From the NCBI GenBank assembly GCA_965240325.2, contig OZ251248.1:682001-746000 (forward strand): a stretch of 64,000 nt of DNA, read 5' to 3'. How positions within the stretch are numbered: the stretch's first letter is position 1; the number at the start of each line of letters is the position of its first letter. The translations under genes and the position numbers were made by a program. This stretch comes from Rebecca billardiae RCC1528 (taxonomy: Eukaryota; Protista; Haptophyta). Below the pieces are notes generated by a model that was given only the letters and a program-made list of their open reading frames with translations, was not told where the DNA came from and did no database searches. Below, piece after piece: positions 4,989 through 9,788 of the stretch.

Positions 4989-6049
4989 TATAAATCAGTA
5001 TATAAGTTATAACTATATGGCAGTCGATAAGTGCCATGCGCCTGCGCTGCTGTGTCTCGGTGATGCGGCGCCACGGGATCACGGGCACTGGCCCCGTTGG
5101 CCGGGCCCCGCGGCCCCGCGGGGCGGGTGCGATCAGGATGCTGAGGATGCGCCGGCAGTCGTAGCCGTAGTGACGCCGAAGCAGCATCAGGCTCAGCACC
5201 AGTCGGAATTTACCGGCGGACGACTTACGTCTTATTACTATTCAATAAGTGACTTTAGTCTTTACCGTATAACCGCGGGTCGTACTCGCCGCATAGACGC
5301 GTAGTAACGTATACGCAGTAGGTAGGTCCTACAGCTACTGACGCCAACTCGTAGACGACGTATCCCGCGGGCGCCGGGGGCCGGGGGGGCGGGCGGACGC
5401 GGGACGGCGGTAACCGGGCCAGTACTGTAGCGCGCATCAATCCATCATGCTGATATCAGTATACGACGTCGGATCGGACAGACCGCGTGCTAGGACTGAG
5501 ACGACGACACCGTCATCATCAGCAGCAAATTCAATCGACATCAATGCTCGCGACTTCCAGGAGGCAGGACGTCACCGGTCACGACCGTCATCATTACGTA
5601 GTCGCCAGTCACGAGACACGCCCGTGTCGACTACTACTGCTGACTCATTGAGTCATATATGAGTCAGACTCATCAGCCCCCGCTGCTGACTGCAACTTAG
5701 TAAGTGCAACTGCGGGCTGACGGGTTCCGGACGCGGATCGGGCGGTCAACGTACATCAGCGGCAACACTAACAGGCGGAGCAGGCGACGCACTGACGCCG
5801 CGGTGCCTCAATCGCCGCGGCCGCCGCGCTGGCACTGGCAGGGCTCCGGTCCCGCGACTCCGTGGCGCGCAGCGGCGTGCGACTGGCGCCTTCGAGTTCG
5901 TCGTCGACACCGCCGCCAGCTCATGCCTCGTCGCTCTGCTTTGAGAATTGAGGCGCGCGCACGCAATCGTCATCGACCGTGTCCGCGCCATTGTCAACTC
6001 CCTCTCTCGCCAGGCTGGACGGCTCGCGAGGGTCGTACGCCGTGCTGAG

Positions 6050-8244
6050 CTAAACATTGGATGCTCGGCTACCGGCCTTCTTCATGCTGCCGCTGCTCTC
6101 CACCTCGATTCTGCTGTGCGTGCCCTCGTGCAGCTCGTTCATGCCCTTGACGAGGCTCGCCGCGTTGGCGGCGGCCGCTTCCCTCATCTTGACGACCGCG
6201 GGGTAGTAGAACTTCTCCTGCCCGGGCATGATGGCGGGCAGCGAGCACAGCTCGTCCACCTCGACGCCGTGGTCTGTGAGCATCTTGTGCTCCAGCGTCA
6301 TGGTCTTCTCCTCAAGCCATCGCTCGATGCGGTCCTCGCCGCCGTTCTGCGCGCGGGCCGCAGCGCGCGTGGCGGGCGGCGCGAGTGAGGCGAAGCGGCT
6401 CCCGCGCCGCCCGCGCCGCCCGCGGCGCGAGCAGCAGCGCGCGCGTACACTCCACGCCTCCTGGTTCATCTTACAGCACTCGACTGCGGTGCCCCCCGTG
6501 TCCGACTTTGCGAACGCCTGCCATGCCTCGTAGAGCGGCGTGACGATGATTTTGATGAAGCCGCCCTGGCACTTGCTGATCTGCGTCGTCTCGCGGTCCA
6601 TGAAGGGCGAGACGTTGTTGCCGACCTCCTTCTCCTTGTCGCCCTGCGCGTGCGCGCGCGTGCGCGTGTGTGTGCGCGTGGAGGGCGCGGCGGGGCGCGC
6701 TCAGCGCACGGCACGCGCGCAGCCGCGCACGCGCGCTGGCGCGCTCAGGGCCGGTGCGCCGCGCCATGCGCCGGCCGGCTCGCCACGTCGCGGTGCGCGC
6801 CAGCCAGCCACGGTGCGCGCGTGCGCTGTGCGCGTGCGCTGTGCGCGTGCCTGCATGAAGAACTCGTTCATCACGCGCACCGCCCACGGGATGCACAGGT
6901 CGGCGCCCTTCGCGGGGTTGGAGACGTCGGAGCAGTGCAGCGCCATCTTGAGGATCATCTTGGTGTTCTCCACGCTCTGCGTCTCGAAGCCGTTGCTGCT
7001 CGTCTTCGTCATGAAGCGCGCGAGCTCGTCGAAGTGGCCCGACATGTCGGTGCCGAGCACCATCGTGATGAGCAGGTCGCGCACCTTGCTGAACTCGTCC
7101 GGCTGCAGCCCCTTGAAGAGGTCGTGCTCGGGGCTGGTGAGCACGGCCCACGCGCGCGAGATGTGCATGTTCTCGAGCACCGCGGCGTCGTTGTACAGCA
7201 TCGCCACCTCGAGCTTGTTCTTCACGTGGAAGAGGTTGTTCAGCCCGGGGTGGCCGTAGTCTGCGAGCGCGCGCGCGGGAGCGAGCGCGGGCGCGGGCGA
7301 GCGCGCGCGCGGGGAGCGGGGCGTCAGCGCGTCAGCGCGTCGCGCGCGAGCCGGCAGGCCAACCCCCCCCCGCCCTCTCCCCCACGGCGGCGGCGGCGAG
7401 CGCGCGACGCACCGTGGCACGCCGCCGCGAGGATCGCGGCGAACAGCTCGATCTCGTTCACGTGCTGCGACACGGCGTCGCCCAGCACGAGCGAGTAGAG
7501 CGTCTGCGTGACGTCGGCCGCGTGGATGCGGTTGTGGTACGGCACGGCCGCGTACCCCGCTTGGATCTTGCTCATCACCTTGGCGAGGTCGGTGGGCAGG
7601 ATGCGGAAGCGGTCGAACATGTTGTGCCGCTCGAAGATCGTGAGCACCAGCGGCACCAGCGGCATCCCGCCCGACACGTCGAACAGCTTGAACACGTCGA
7701 ACTCCCAGCCGTCCACGTGCGACAGCATCTCGTCGAGCTGCTTGCGCTGCGGCGCGCTCAGCGTGCGGATGCCGTACGTCTTCGCGCCGTGGACGTGGTC
7801 GTCGTCGTCGTGCTTGGCCTGCGCGGCGAGGCTGGTTCGCCTGGGCCCGGACTCGCGCGACGCCTCCGCCTCCTCCACCGCCTTCTCCTTGATGTGGTAC
7901 TGCGAGTTGAGCCACTCCGCGGTCTCGGAGTCGAGGTTCTCGCCCGTCAGCCCCGTGTTCACGACCGCGTGGTACAGCCGGTCAGAGCCGATCACGTCGA
8001 CGATCCACGCGAGGTTGCGCTTGTCGGACTGGTTGTCCAGCCGCGCCGCCAGCTCCTGGAGCAGCGAGAGCACCTTGTACACCGGCGCCTCCACCCCGCT
8101 CTCGAGCGACGCGTACTTGAGCTTGGTCAGCCCCTCGCGCGACTTGTTGAGCTTGTTCATGATGAGCAACACGCGGATGATGCGCCCCAGCCGCAGCACG
8201 CGCACGATCACGTTGGACGTGCCGTCCGACTGCGCGCGCGGCGG

Positions 8245-8275
<31 letters not shown>

Positions 8276-9131
8276 GGTGGGCACGCGCGCGGCCGGGCGT
8301 GAGCTCGAGCCGGCCCGGCCCGCGCGGGCGGCGCGGGCGCGCGGCGCCCGTCACCCATCCACCCACGCACGCACGGCCGCCGCCGCTGGCCCGCGCCTCC
8401 GCCTCTGAGACTCTGAGAGGGGTAGCCCCCCCCCCCCCTCGGTGCCGCCAGCCCACGGTGTGGCCCGCGCCGAGCGAGCCCGCGCGCACACACCCCGCAT
8501 CCCCCGCCCGCACACACCCCGCCCCCCCCGCCGCCCGCCCCTGCGCGTGCGCGTGCGTGCGCACAGTGAGCGAGAAGACGGTGAAGAAGAAGGACACCAC
8601 CACAATCGTCGTGTCAAACAGGTTCACAAAGTTGAACAGGTACTTGTGCCCGAAGGCGAAGACCTTGACGATGATCTCGACGAGGAAGAGGGAGAGAAAG
8701 ACCAGGTCCACGTACACGAGCACCACGTTCGAGAGGAACTCCTCGACCGTCTCCACCTCCGTGCAGTCGTCCGTCTCGAGGCTCAGCCCTGCGAAAATGA
8801 ACAGCGTGTACACGAGCACGAGCATGATGATGGTCATGTCGACCACGCGCGTCTCGAAGAGCTCAGCGGCGCCAACGCGCCTCCTCTCGAACCAGCTGAG
8901 CTCGCCGTACGGCCGCTTGCCGAACACTTTGGCTGTGGCCGTGTCGCGACGCGACGTCGCCGCCTGCTCGCGCTCCTCGGCCTCCACCGGGTCCTCCGCC
9001 GCGGCAGGCGCGCCGGTCACGAGCTCAGAGAACGTCCTGGACTTCTTCTTGATTCGATTCGGGGCACTCGACGAGTTCCGACCCAGCCCCAGGGTCGGCG
9101 TGTCCGACGGGTTCACCTTGGAGGTGACCAT
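6050..9131 (-). CDS. Class I 3',5'-cyclic nucleotide phosphodiesterase with N-terminal S1-S4 voltage-sensor domain
   Basis: Exons 9131-8565, 8229-7413, 7260-6851, 6643-6449 and 6346-6050 sum to 2286 nt (761 aa). PDE motifs: YHNRIHAADV, HDYGHPGLNN, LENMH, TDMSGHF, HCSDVSNP, EFFMQGDKEK, QGGFI. There are four N-terminal TM helices, including S4 VRVLRLGRIIRVLL. Intron 3 (6644-6850) is GC-AG. Confidence 0.92.
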
Positions 9132-9788
9132 CGCGCCCACCACCACACACTTCGGTTTCGCCGGCCGTGTGGTGATGAATCTCAACGCGCTGGAGTATTC
9201 CGGATAGTCGCGAGGCACTGCGCACCCGCACGAGTGCGGAGTACCCCTTCATGGAGGCTGGCCGGCACCTATGACGCGAATCGTGCCGTGTGAGTACAGA
9301 GTAGTCATTCCAGGTTTGAAAAGCGAGTCCATAAGAGCATCATTGCTTGCAAGATTGTATGATCATGTCAATTGTTGTACCAAATGATGTTCAAGCTCAC
9401 ACACCGTTCCGGAAGTCCTAATAGCAGAAAGACAAACGGTTTTGCAAGGTCGTCGTTCGATGCTCCCGGCAGTAGCGACCCACCGATCACAGTTGTGAGT
9501 TGACAGTACACAGTGACACTACACACGACTGGCGCGCGGCCGGGGTGCGTGCGACCGACGGCCGGTCCGCGTCGGCAGTGAGCGCCGGAGCATGGGCTGC
9601 TTGCTCAGCACTCGGGGGAAGCTGCGCTTGGCAGCCCGCCAGCCGACCGAGCCTGAGAGGTCACGATGGGGACGATGGGTGCGCCGGCAGCCACGCCAGC
9701 GATGTCGGCGTGCGGCCGGCGCCCCTCCGACTCGGAGTCGGGAGTCTGAGCAACGACGGCGCGCCGCGCGCTCCCGCGCCGCGCGCGC

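What the first reader, a model, noticed from the sequence alone, without database searches (positions are those of the whole stretch)
6050..9131. Candidate voltage-sensing phosphodiesterase: a pore-less S1-S4 voltage sensor fused to an intact class I PDE
Seen in sequence: removing the 335-nt GT-AG intron 8564-8230 joins S1 (VVDMTIIMLVLVYTLFIF), S2 (VDLVFLSLFLVEIIVKVF) and S3 (NLFDTTIVVVSFF) to S4 (VIVRVLRLGRIIRVLLI). The intron splits the domain, so the raw ORF track hides it. No S5-P-S6 pore follows; S4 runs straight into a basic helical linker and then a PDE domain with the metal-binding His/Asp residues and the invariant Gln intact. Established knowledge: four Arg at every third position in S4, the S2 F-x-x-E charge-transfer centre and the S3 Asp are voltage-sensor hallmarks. 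The same layout of sensor plus enzyme defines VSP/TPTE phosphatases. The Hv1 signatures (mid-S1 Asp, RxWRxxR) are absent. Inference: membrane potential may directly control cAMP/cGMP hydrolysis, an electrical analogue of rhodopsin-PDE that could link excitability to flagellar or haptonema behaviour. I know of no functionally characterised enzyme with this architecture, but cannot exclude database annotations of it.
Basis: partly seen in the sequence, partly recalled or inferred. Interest (0 to 1): 0.93.

Follow-up and report, generated by a model that had tools for sequence, protein, structure and literature searches.

The report
Pore-less voltage sensor fused to phosphodiesterase
This gene joins a channel-type voltage sensor that has no ion pore to an intact cAMP/cGMP-degrading enzyme; the design is widespread in protists but untested, and may let membrane voltage switch second-messenger breakdown directly.

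Summary
A five-exon minus-strand gene (9131..6050) encodes a 761-aa protein with three parts: a cytosolic N-terminus, an S1-S4 voltage-sensor domain with no S5-P-S6, and a ~130-aa linker leading into an intact class I PDE domain.

No RNA-seq run could be found, so the exon 1-2 junction rests on homology. The spliced product aligns without gaps across all four junctions to relatives. These include one genomic relative that encodes S1 through the PDE in a single uninterrupted ORF, and transcriptome-derived proteins.

The gene is not unique. It belongs to a family carrying Pfam Ion_trans (S1-S4 half only) plus PDEase_I. Members occur in haptophytes (Chrysochromulina), stramenopiles (Platysulcus, Chrysoparadoxa) and ciliates (Protocruzia). 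One ESM Atlas cluster has 248 members.

Across 40 diverged members the charge-transfer centre and S4 arginines R2-R4 are 92-100% conserved. The sensor is as conserved as the catalytic domain.

Toxoplasma and Euplotes papers mention the domain pair in passing. GenBank labels one member "PDE1A". Two VSD reviews (2023, 2024) do not mention it, and I found no functional study.

Voltage control of hydrolysis is a well-motivated inference, not a shown fact. I class it as a new variant of the voltage-sensor-plus-enzyme kind (VSP-like).

The parts
6050..9131 (-). Whole coding region of the VSD-PDE gene (5 exons, 761 codons plus TAG stop at 6052-6050)
   Evidence: Model built. It gives a single blastp HSP to relatives P0001 (61.6% id, model aa 104-730) and P0003 (50.9%). 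GC dips at 9300-9499 (46%) and 5500-5699 (53.5%) bracket the gene.
8565..9131 (-). Exon 1: cytosolic N-terminus (aa 1-95) plus S1, S2 and S3 (aa 96-189)
   Evidence: Pfam Ion_trans 4e-7, profile positions 2-82 of 241. ATG 9131 is the first in-frame ATG after an upstream stop.
8778..8846 (-). S1 (aa 96-118), with Tyr108 at the mid-helix position where Cav/Nav carry Asn; no Asp
   Evidence: Hydropathy. Family column is Y 27/40, N 10/40. The position aligns to the Cav1.2 S1 Asn.
8652..8720 (-). S2 (aa 138-160) with D142, F149, E152 and K156: outer acid, charge-transfer Phe, inner acid, basic residue
   Evidence: Regex. Family conservation: D/E 39/40, F 37/40, E/D 40/40, K/R 40/40.
8565..8630 (-). 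S3 (aa 168-189) with N170 and D173
   Evidence: D173 is invariant in 40/40 family members.
8230..8564 (-). Intron 1 (335 nt, GT-AG, 85% GC), which splits the sensor between S3 and S4
   Evidence: The junction is gap-free against P0001 (FTVFSLT|SDGTSNVIV vs FTVISVTSDNQSSTIV). The relative L002 has no intron here. The intron translation has no Pfam hit.
7413..8229 (-). Exon 2: S3-S4 loop, S4, linker and the first part of the PDE domain up to the His of the HD motif
   Evidence: Many of the best 150 relatives listed align to it from S4 through to its end.
8155..8217 (-). S4 (aa 194-214): R199, R202, R205 and R208 at every third position
   Evidence: Family conservation: R1 24/40, R2 R/K 39/40, R3 40/40, R4 38/40.
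7942..8154 (-). Conserved post-S4 linker module (aa 215-285): basic continuation of the S4 helix (NKLNKSREGLTKLKY), then two conserved helices (GVEAPVYKVLSLLQEL and KRNLAWIVDVIGSDRLY)
   Evidence: Family consensus MNKVxxAxxxxKKAKYLxLGSPVERVxELL...WIMxLIxSDxLYT. The AF2 model of the relative shows S4 as one helix 97-130 followed by helices 132-139, 144-158 and 162-176, with pLDDT up to 96.
7762..7941 (-). Variable, probably disordered spacer (aa 286-345)
   Evidence: Low identity to relatives, 12-44%. pLDDT is below 50 in the corresponding part of the relative's model.
6341..7761 (-). Class I PDE catalytic domain (aa 346-665, interrupted by introns 2-4) with intact metal-binding His/Asp residues and the invariant Gln624
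   Evidence: Pfam PDEase_I over exons 2-4. Motifs. The closest relative's domain matches PDE1B at 2.3e-62 and PDE4B at 3.5e-60 in PDB. The relative's model overlays PDE4/PDE1 at about 2 A.
7261..7412 (-). Intron 2 (152 nt, GT-AG, phase 1), which splits the Asp codon of the HD motif
   Evidence: The PDEase_I profile continues from position 42 to 44 across it.
6644..6850 (-). Intron 3 (207 nt, GC-AG) after ...EFFMQ
   Evidence: The relative L002 has a GT-AG intron at the identical position.
6347..6448 (-). Intron 4 (102 nt, GT-AG)
   Evidence: The junction is gap-free against P0001.
6053..6340 (-). C-terminal tail (aa 666-761), weakly conserved
   Evidence: 30% identity to P0001 over 71 aligned residues. 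No Pfam family.

Best explanation
Shown: the locus is one gene encoding a membrane protein with three parts. The first is a canonical S1-S4 voltage-sensor domain with no pore domain. It has four S4 arginines and a complete charge-transfer centre (F149/E152/D173, plus outer acid D142). The second is a linker in which S4 continues as a basic cytosolic helix into a conserved two-helix module. The third is a catalytically intact class I cyclic-nucleotide phosphodiesterase. By the positive-inside pattern, both the N-terminus and the PDE face the cytosol. The gene belongs to a conserved protist family with exactly this layout.

Inferred: changes in membrane potential move S4. The movement passes through the continuous S4 helix and the conserved linker helices to the PDE domain, either through its dimer geometry or through an autoinhibitory contact. 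cAMP and/or cGMP hydrolysis therefore becomes voltage-dependent. This would be a VSP-like principle applied to a different enzyme, and the degradative counterpart of the channel-cyclase fusions of alveolates.

The polarity of the response (depolarisation- or hyperpolarisation-activated) and the substrate (cAMP or cGMP) cannot be told from sequence.
For: Gene model and motifs.

Pfam on the window's own exons: Ion_trans 4e-7; PDEase_I seamless across introns 2-4.

One-gene status:
- Single gap-free alignments to P0001, P0003, P0012, P0004 and others across all junctions.
- Genomic relative L002 encodes S1 through ...EFFMQ in one 498-codon ORF and shares the intron 3 position.
- Transcriptome-derived members exist in Platysulcus tardus, Protocruzia adherens and Chrysochromulina rotalis.

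Family layout: 14/14 relatives tested carry Ion_trans covering only about profile positions 2-125 of 241, plus PDEase_I.

Bona fide VSD:
- The family profile hits Cav/Nav VSDs (E down to 2.3e-52), an Hv1 chimera (1.1e-20), Hv1 (1.7e-17), Ci-VSP (8e-16) and NavMs (4.2e-15).
- The AF2 model of the VSD plus linker of a 51%-identical relative has pLDDT 84.6.
- That model overlays AtTPC1, Cav1.2 and Ci-VSP sensors at 2.0-2.6 A over 101-113 residues, Z 11.7-12.2.
- The Ci-VSP VSD is Foldseek's top hit.

Selection on the sensor:
- In 40 non-redundant members, S3 Asp is 40/40, S2 Glu/Asp 40/40, S2 Phe 37/40, R3 40/40, R2 39/40 and R4 38/40.
- VSD identity to distant members (35-42%) equals PDE-domain identity (38-41%).

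Conserved linker module.

Intact catalytic domain.
Against: No transcript data exist for this locus, so the exon 1-2 join rests on homology.

No functional data exist for any member, as far as I could find.

The S4-to-catalytic-domain connection is about 130 aa and includes a poorly conserved stretch predicted to be disordered. Tight mechanical coupling as in VSP is therefore not obvious.

The closest genomic relative, P0003, keeps only two of the four S4 arginines, which suggests some paralogues can do without full voltage sensing.

The Toxoplasma survey reports many substitutions among the PDE signature residues of TgPDE4 (PMC7720076), so not every member need be an active enzyme.

The AF2 output gives no inter-domain confidence, so the coupling geometry is unknown.
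Confidence: 0.6

Rival explanations
1. The S1-S4 domain is only a membrane anchor, targeting module or oligomerisation module inherited from a channel. The PDE is constitutive or is controlled by other inputs such as Ca2+/calmodulin or phosphorylation. Voltage plays no part.
For: - Many protist PDEs are membrane-anchored by TM helices without known sensing roles: the Toxoplasma survey predicts at least one TM helix in each of its 18 PDEs and compares this with Plasmodium PDEs (PMC7720076).
- The catalytic domain is closest to PDE1, and a haptophyte member is annotated as CaM-dependent PDE1A.
- The post-S4 helix is basic and amphipathic.
- P0003 has lost two S4 arginines.
- The linker is long and partly disordered.
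Against: A mere anchor would not keep the S2 Phe, the S2 and S3 acids and three to four in-register arginines at 92-100% across members that share only 25-40% identity. No PDE1 N-terminal domain (PF08499) or PDE4 UCR (PF18100) match was reported at E<=1 on exon 2 or at E<=0.01 in relatives.
Confidence: 0.22
2. The sensor itself conducts protons or ions (Hv1-like, or an omega/gating-pore current). The PDE domain would be a passenger or a regulator, so the protein is a conductance coupled to cNMP signalling rather than a voltage-regulated enzyme.
For: The strongest single-VSD matches are to Hv1: a chimera at 77 bits and Hv1 at 67 bits. Many Hv1 clusters appear in AlphaFold DB. As in Hv1, S4 continues as a long cytosolic helix. 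Some family members lack R1, a situation the 2023 review links to gating-pore currents (PMC10651576).
Against: The window's protein has all four arginines. It has no Trp in S4 (no RxWRxxR) and no acidic residue in mid-S1. That position is Tyr (27/40) or Asn (10/40) in the family. From established Hv1 knowledge, the mid-S1 Asp is required for proton selectivity.
Confidence: 0.07
3. Gene-model artefact: exon 1 (S1-S3) belongs to a decayed or separate channel gene next to an ordinary PDE gene, and the S4-like segment is coincidental.
For: No RNA evidence at this locus. A Euplotes genome paper described PDEase_I and Ion_trans as adjacent genes (PMC8670190).
Against: - The junction is gap-free and in frame, with S4 immediately after it.
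- The spliced product matches the family VSD profile in a single domain, E 3.5e-34.
- Relatives encode everything in one ORF or one mRNA.
- There is no AT-richer intergenic dip between exon 1 and exon 2, whereas both gene ends have one.
Confidence: 0.03

Closest known systems
Voltage-sensing phosphatase (Ci-VSP / TPTE family)
   Same: An N-terminal pore-less S1-S4 sensor is followed by a basic post-S4 segment and a cytosolic enzyme. The family VSD profile matches the Ci-VSP sensor at E 8e-16. The modelled sensor overlays Ci-VSP at 2.6 A over 112 residues and is Foldseek's top hit.
   Different: The enzyme is a class I cyclic-nucleotide PDE (HD-type metal hydrolase), not a PTEN-like CX5R lipid phosphatase. 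The substrate is soluble rather than a membrane lipid. The linker is about 130 aa with its own conserved two-helix module, much longer than the short phosphoinositide-binding linker I recall for VSP.
Uncharacterised protist Ion_trans + PDEase_I proteins (e.g. Chrysochromulina tobinii KOO25557.1, Platysulcus tardus, Protocruzia adherens, Chrysoparadoxa australica; by published description Toxoplasma TgPDE4/TgPDE16)
   Same: Same family and same layout: the S1-S4 half of Ion_trans, the conserved MNK...PVE+V...LY linker, then PDEase_I. An ESM Atlas cluster of 248 members is mostly ciliate where the phylum is known.
   Different: The window's protein is only 28-36% identical to the named members. 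Its nearest relatives (61% and 51%) are unnamed environmental sequences. None has been studied as a voltage sensor. Existing annotations call them 'phosphodiesterase', 'PDE1A' or 'ion transport domain' (PMC7720076; PMC8809380). I did not test homology to the Toxoplasma proteins.
Voltage-gated proton channel Hv1
   Same: A stand-alone S1-S4 domain whose S4 continues as a cytosolic helix. It gives the best single-domain sequence scores and many AlphaFold DB fold hits.
   Different: There is no mid-S1 Asp and no RxWRxxR motif. The protein carries a large enzyme domain instead of a short coiled coil.
Rhodopsin-phosphodiesterase (Rh-PDE) of choanoflagellates
   Same: A membrane-embedded physical sensor fused N-terminally to a class I PDE, giving direct stimulus control of cNMP hydrolysis. 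This comparison rests on my own knowledge and was not tested here.
   Different: The sensor there is a retinal-binding rhodopsin that responds to light. Here it is an S1-S4 voltage sensor with no rhodopsin homology (Pfam).
Alveolate adenylyl cyclase / K+-channel fusions (Paramecium, Plasmodium, Tetrahymena) and the sperm Na+/H+ exchanger SLC9C1
   Same: Both are VSD-containing non-channel effectors that link membrane potential to cyclic-nucleotide signalling (listed in PMC10651576). The SLC9C1 sensor with its long S4 helix aligns to the model over 150-160 residues.
   Different: The cyclase fusions keep a pore module and synthesise cAMP. SLC9C1 is a transporter with a CNBD. This protein has no pore, no CNBD, and degrades cNMP.
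Mammalian PDE1 and PDE4 catalytic domains
   Same: The nearest solved catalytic domains are PDE1B at 2.3e-62 and PDE4B at 3.5e-60, with overlay at about 2 A. All catalytic motifs are shared.
   Different: No PDE1 N-terminal domain (PF08499) and no PDE4 UCR (PF18100) was detected. The regulatory region is replaced by the VSD plus linker.

Membership tests
Voltage-sensor domain (S1-S4 of the voltage-gated cation channel superfamily; N-terminal half of Pfam Ion_trans PF00520) | Significant profile match to S1-S4 | tested here: met
   Exon 1 alone hits Ion_trans at 4e-7, 29.9 bits against a cut-off of 25. The spliced product scores 111 bits against the family VSD profile. That profile hits Cav/Nav/Hv1/Ci-VSP/NavMs sensors at E 2e-52 to 4e-15.
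Voltage-sensor domain (S1-S4 of the voltage-gated cation channel superfamily; N-terminal half of Pfam Ion_trans PF00520) | S4 with at least three basic residues spaced every third position | tested here: met
   R199, R202, R205 and R208. R2-R4 are 95-100% conserved in the family.
Voltage-sensor domain (S1-S4 of the voltage-gated cation channel superfamily; N-terminal half of Pfam Ion_trans PF00520) | Charge-transfer centre: S2 aromatic, S2 acidic and S3 Asp, plus an outer S2 acid | tested here: met
   D142-x6-F149-x2-E152-x3-K156 and N170-x2-D173. Family conservation is 92-100%.
Voltage-sensor domain (S1-S4 of the voltage-gated cation channel superfamily; N-terminal half of Pfam Ion_trans PF00520) | Four-helix antiparallel TM bundle fold | tested here: met
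   Tested on a 51%-identical relative, not on the window's own product, because the spliced sequence has no reference. AF2 pLDDT is 84.6. Z is 11.7-12.2 and rmsd 2.0-2.6 A to the AtTPC1, Cav1.2 and Ci-VSP sensors. The window's own hydropathy shows S1-S3.
Voltage-sensor domain (S1-S4 of the voltage-gated cation channel superfamily; N-terminal half of Pfam Ion_trans PF00520) | Gating-charge movement in response to voltage | not testable with these tools
   Needs electrophysiology.
Class I 3',5'-cyclic nucleotide phosphodiesterase (PF00233) | Profile match over the whole catalytic domain | tested here: met
   PDEase_I profile positions 1-42, 44-183 (1.4e-40) and 184-229 on exons 2, 3 and 4.
Class I 3',5'-cyclic nucleotide phosphodiesterase (PF00233) | Metal-binding and catalytic His/Asp residues (YHNxxHAxDV, HDxxHxGxxN, LExxH, TDM, HxxDxSN) and the invariant substrate-clamping Gln | tested here: met
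   All motifs are present at aa 420, 461, 490, 532, 570 and 624. The same motifs align to PDE1B in the closest relative.
Class I 3',5'-cyclic nucleotide phosphodiesterase (PF00233) | cAMP/cGMP hydrolysis | not testable with these tools
   Needs an enzyme assay. Substrate preference is not predictable from the data here.
Voltage-sensing phosphatase (VSP/TPTE) | Pore-less VSD N-terminal to a cytosolic enzyme | tested here: met
Voltage-sensing phosphatase (VSP/TPTE) | PTEN-like phosphatase plus C2 domain with a CX5R active site | tested here: not met
   Pfam finds only PDEase_I downstream of S4. The protein is not a VSP member, only a functional analogue.
Hv1 voltage-gated proton channel | Mid-S1 Asp selectivity filter and the S4 RxWRxxR motif | tested here: not met
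   S1 is MTIIMLVLVYTLFIFAGLSL, with no acidic residue in the core. S4 is RVLRLGRIIR, with no Trp. The family column is Y/N.
PDE1 (Ca2+/calmodulin-dependent PDE), as a GenBank homologue is labelled | N-terminal PDE1 regulatory domain (PF08499 PDEase_I_N) | tested here: not met
   No PF08499 hit at E<=1 on exon 2 or at E<=0.01 in 14 relatives, including KOO25557.1. Catalytic-domain similarity to PDE1B is only marginally better than to PDE4B.
Voltage-gated ion channel (full Ion_trans) | S5-P-loop-S6 pore module after S4 | tested here: not met
   Ion_trans coverage stops at profile position 125 of 241 or earlier in all relatives tested. No hydrophobic segment follows aa 215 in the window's product.

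The most novel reading that the evidence does not exclude
This gene and its protist-wide family are true voltage-gated cyclic-nucleotide phosphodiesterases. That would make them a second class of voltage-sensing enzyme after VSP. Membrane potential would set cAMP/cGMP breakdown directly, without Ca2+ or channels as intermediaries. They might work push-pull with voltage-sensor/cyclase fusions; another unchecked note reports one in the same genome.
Probability: 0.5. Interest if true: 0.9.

Novelty: new variant of a known kind. Interest (0 to 1): 0.72.

Why it matters
By my own knowledge, the only well-characterised enzyme driven directly by an S1-S4 voltage sensor is the phosphoinositide phosphatase VSP. 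A 2023 review lists all reported VSD-containing proteins: channels, sNHE, the alveolate cyclase-channel fusion, VSP and Hv1. It contains no phosphodiesterase (PMC10651576).

A conserved, pore-less VSD-PDE family would show that voltage sensors were coupled to second-messenger degradation across several major protist lineages: haptophytes, stramenopiles and ciliates. It would give a direct route from excitability to cAMP/cGMP levels in swimming and sensing cells.

It would also offer a natural scaffold for voltage-controlled cNMP tools, complementing light-controlled Rh-PDE.

The hypothesis can be tested directly by heterologous expression, and the window supplies a complete, apparently intact example.

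Current annotations ("PDE1A", "ion transport domain", "adjacent genes") hide the family.

Tried and rejected
RNA-seq confirmation: the look-up of sequencing runs listed no run, either for the whole gene as RNA or for exon 2 as any kind. Read laying was therefore not usable.

Same-species transcripts: a metagenome/metatranscriptome scan with exon 2 found no relative.

Full-length product in other tools: the spliced 761-aa product has no reference. Database searches, folding and fold searches were therefore done on single exons or on relatives (P0001, P0003).

Region-limited homologue searches, meant to gather named taxa:
- P0158 VSD plus linker gave 16 hits, all unnamed.
- P0037 VSD plus linker gave 2 hits.
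- Names came instead from cluster look-ups.

Literature:
- Six exact phrases for a voltage-sensing, -gated or -dependent phosphodiesterase, including 'VSD-PDE', returned 0 papers.
- 'voltage-sensing' + 'phosphodiesterase' + 'VSD' returned 20 papers, none relevant by title or abstract among the 18 listed.
- Four other term combinations returned nothing or nothing relevant.

Foldseek on the VSD model gave weak E-values (best 0.095), as is usual for helical bundles. I relied on the ranking, the VIA-align Z and rmsd values, and the sequence profiles instead.

The one long-form PDE4B fold hit has rmsd 7.6 A. I rejected this as a membership claim. The linker is a family-specific conserved module.

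Antisense ORFs (597, 282 and 239 aa on the plus strand) and the intron 1 translation have no Pfam hit. I treat them as by-products of the high GC content.

Organism identity was not established. The tools mask it, and the nearest relatives are unnamed.


Full report
**Observation**

The region holds a minus-strand gene. I rebuilt it from the sequence.
- Exons: 9131-8565, 8229-7413, 7260-6851, 6643-6449 and 6346-6050, with a TAG stop.
- Introns: 335 nt (GT-AG), 152 nt (GT-AG, phase 1, inside the Asp codon of the HD motif), 207 nt (GC-AG) and 102 nt (GT-AG).
- Composition: introns are 83-86% GC; the coding sequence is 64% GC with GC3 of 95%.
- Boundaries: GC dips to 46% at 9300-9499 and to 53.5% at 5500-5699, bracketing the gene. 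There is no such dip between exon 1 and exon 2.

- S2 reads D142-x6-F149-x2-E152-x3-K156.
- S3 carries N170 and D173.
- S4 has R199, R202, R205 and R208.
- After S4 there is no further hydrophobic segment.
- The PDE motifs YHNRIHAADV, HDYGHPGLNN, LENMH, TDM, HCSDVSN and QGGF are intact.

**Is it more than chance, and is it one gene?**

Pfam evidence on the window's own exons:
- Ion_trans is found on exon 1 alone (4e-7, above the curated cut-off, profile positions 2-82 of 241).
- PDEase_I runs without a break over exons 2, 3 and 4 (positions 1-42, 44-183 and 184-229). This fixes introns 2-4.

No public sequencing run could be listed for the locus. A metagenome scan found no same-species transcript. 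The exon 1-2 junction therefore rests on homology, and that evidence is strong.
- An exhaustive search with exon 2 found many proteins that align from S4 right through to the end of the exon.
- The spliced product aligns in a single HSP to several relatives, crossing every junction: P0001 (61.6% identity, model aa 104-730), P0003 (50.9%), P0004 and P0012, among others.
- Around each junction the alignment to P0001 is gap-free, for example FTVFSLT|SDGTSNVIV against FTVISVTSDNQSSTIV.
- P0003 lies on a 12.9-kb genomic contig. There, S1 through ...EFFMQ is one uninterrupted 498-codon ORF.
- That ORF is followed by an intron at exactly the position of the window's intron 3.
- Members from Platysulcus tardus, Protocruzia adherens (MMETSP0216) and Chrysochromulina rotalis (MMETSP0287) come from transcriptomes, so single mRNAs encode both domains.
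- Against a profile built from 18 family sensors, the spliced product scores 111 bits (E 3.5e-34) in one domain spanning the junction.

Antisense ORFs and the intron translation have no Pfam family.

**What it is**

All 14 relatives I scanned have Ion_trans covering only profile positions of about 2-125 of 241, that is S1-S4 with no pore, followed by PDEase_I.

The family sensor profile matches solved voltage sensors:

| Solved structure | E-value |
|---|---|
| Cav and Nav repeats | down to 2.3e-52 |
| Hv1 chimera (3wkv) | 1.1e-20 |
| Hv1 (5oqk) | 1.7e-17 |
| Ci-VSP (4g7v) | 8e-16 |
| NavMs | 4.2e-15 |

Structure predictions used P0003, because the window's spliced product has no reference.
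- The AF2 model of residues 1-498 has pLDDT 82. It shows four TM helices, with S4 running on as one helix into the cytosol.
- After S4 come three short linker helices, a disordered spacer and then a PDE fold.
- The PDE fold overlays PDE4 and PDE1 catalytic domains at about 2 A.
- A sensor-plus-linker model (pLDDT 84.6) has the Ci-VSP sensor as Foldseek's top hit.
- With VIA-align, that model overlays the AtTPC1, Cav1.2 and Ci-VSP sensors at 2.0-2.6 A over 101-113 residues (Z 11.7-12.2). It also aligns to the SLC9C1 sensor.

The tool warns that such Z values are not decisive for helical bundles. But nearly every top match is an S1-S4 domain, apart from a few designed helical repeats, and the sequence profiles agree.

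The closest solved catalytic domains are PDE1B (2.3e-62) and PDE4B (3.5e-60). No PDE1 N-terminal or PDE4 UCR domain is detected.

**Conservation**

I counted key residues in 40 non-redundant family sensors.

| Position (window numbering) | Conserved in family |
|---|---|
| S2 outer acid (D142) | D/E 39/40 |
| S2 Phe (F149) | 37/40 |
| S2 inner acid (E152) | E/D 40/40 |
| S2 basic (K156) | K/R 40/40 |
| S3 Asp (D173) | 40/40 |
| S4 R1 (R199) | R 24/40 |
| S4 R2 (R202) | R/K 39/40 |
| S4 R3 (R205) | 40/40 |
| S4 R4 (R208) | 38/40 |
| Mid-S1 (Y108) | Tyr 27/40, Asn 10/40, never Asp |

- Identity of the window's sensor to distant members (35-42%) equals that of its catalytic domain (38-41%).
- A linker module directly after S4 is also conserved. 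It consists of the basic MNK...R...K helix, then PVE+V..LL and W..LI.S..LY helices.

This pattern is what one expects if the sensor has to work as a sensor and pass something on. It is not what one expects of a passive anchor.

**Mechanism (inference)**

By the positive-inside pattern, the N-terminus, the S2-S3 loop and the post-S4 helix are cytosolic, so the PDE faces the cytosol. I propose three steps:
1. S4 moves with voltage.
2. The continuous S4 helix and the conserved linker helices carry that motion onward.
3. The PDE's activity changes, through an autoinhibitory contact or through dimer geometry.

Polarity and substrate are unknown.

Weak points:
- The spacer between the linker module and the catalytic domain is about 60 aa, poorly conserved and predicted to be disordered.
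- The nearest genomic relative keeps only two S4 arginines.
- No inter-domain confidence was available from the models.

**Rivals**
- Anchor only, with other regulation such as calmodulin. This is possible, but sensor conservation argues against it.
- Hv1-like conduction. The sensor scores best against Hv1, and AlphaFold DB fold hits include many Hv1 clusters. But the mid-S1 Asp and RxWRxxR are absent.
- Mis-joined genes. This is unlikely for the reasons given above.

**Known or new?**

The architecture is already in public databases.
- An ESM Atlas cluster named "Phosphodiesterase" has 248 members. All carry PF00233 and 73% carry PF00520. It is mostly ciliate where the phylum is known.
- AlphaFold DB clusters named "Phosphodiesterase" are the top fold matches to the sensor-plus-linker model.
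- Chrysochromulina tobinii KOO25557.1 is a member and is annotated "calcium calmodulin-dependent ... phosphodiesterase 1a".
- Chrysoparadoxa australica has one as an "unnamed protein product".

Three papers mention the pair of domains in passing:
[quoted passage not shown] - In Euplotes, PDEase_I and Ion_trans "were always adjacent" (PMC8670190).

None of these treats the domain as a voltage sensor.

Two reviews of voltage sensors do not mention a phosphodiesterase.
- The 2024 review "Voltage sensors" has no occurrence of the word (PMC13095418).

Exact-phrase searches for a voltage-sensing, -gated or -dependent phosphodiesterase returned nothing. The library lacks most subscription-journal papers, so a published characterisation cannot be fully excluded.

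**Verdict**

The gene is an intact member of a widespread but functionally unexplored VSD-PDE family. I class it as a new variant of the voltage-sensor-plus-enzyme kind.

Other unchecked notes from this scan call the genome probably haptophyte and report a voltage-sensor/cyclase fusion elsewhere in it. I did not test either claim. Haptophyte members of the family exist, which fits the first. The second would fit a push-pull scheme.

Noticed in passing
window 6644-6850 (minus strand); L002 1853-2026: Intron 3 of the gene uses a GC-AG splice pair. The homologous intron, at the identical codon position in a 51%-identical relative, is GT-AG.
   Followed up: partly
window 8230-8564, 7261-7412, 6644-6850, 6347-6448: The introns are more GC-rich (83-86%) than the coding sequence (64%) and are low-complexity: GCGC/CGCC runs, a poly-G run of about 11 near 8430-8440, and a (CCG)n-like stretch near 8235-8265. 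In this genome introns cannot be spotted by AT-richness. The high GC also opens long spurious antisense ORFs, for example 7414-9207 on the plus strand (597 aa, no Pfam hit).
   Followed up: partly
window 9300-9499: A sharp GC dip to 46%, against a window mean of 71.6%, lies just upstream of the start codon. It is probably the promoter / 5' intergenic region.
   Followed up: no
P0305 (Chrysochromulina tobinii KOO25557.1): This haptophyte family member is annotated in GenBank as a calcium/calmodulin-dependent PDE1A. It has an N-terminal Ion_trans S1-S4 domain (aa 44-165) and no PDE1 N-terminal domain, so the name looks misleading.
   Followed up: yes
P0012, P0021, P0121, P0013 (family members): A subgroup has a three-residue insertion inside S4 (for example LRLFRLRVVFRVLRL). 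It adds an arginine and shifts the register by one helical turn, which is unusual for voltage sensors.
   Followed up: no
P0003 / L002 359-1957: The closest genomic relative has a partly neutralised S4 (IVQLIRLGRLVLVMLI, only two arginines) while keeping the charge-transfer centre. It may be a paralogue with reduced or altered voltage sensitivity. Its database gene model is also truncated, because the ORF-style gene call stops at the intron after EFFMQ.
   Followed up: partly
PMC8670190 (Euplotes genomes): The reported 'always adjacent' PDEase_I and Ion_trans genes in Euplotes may in fact be single VSD-PDE genes split by annotation.
   Followed up: no
same genome, another piece (note s1-341161): An unchecked first-stage note reports a voltage-sensor/cyclase fusion with lost metal-binding aspartates in the same genome. 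Together with the VSD-PDE, this would suggest voltage-linked control of both synthesis and breakdown of cyclic nucleotides.
   Followed up: no
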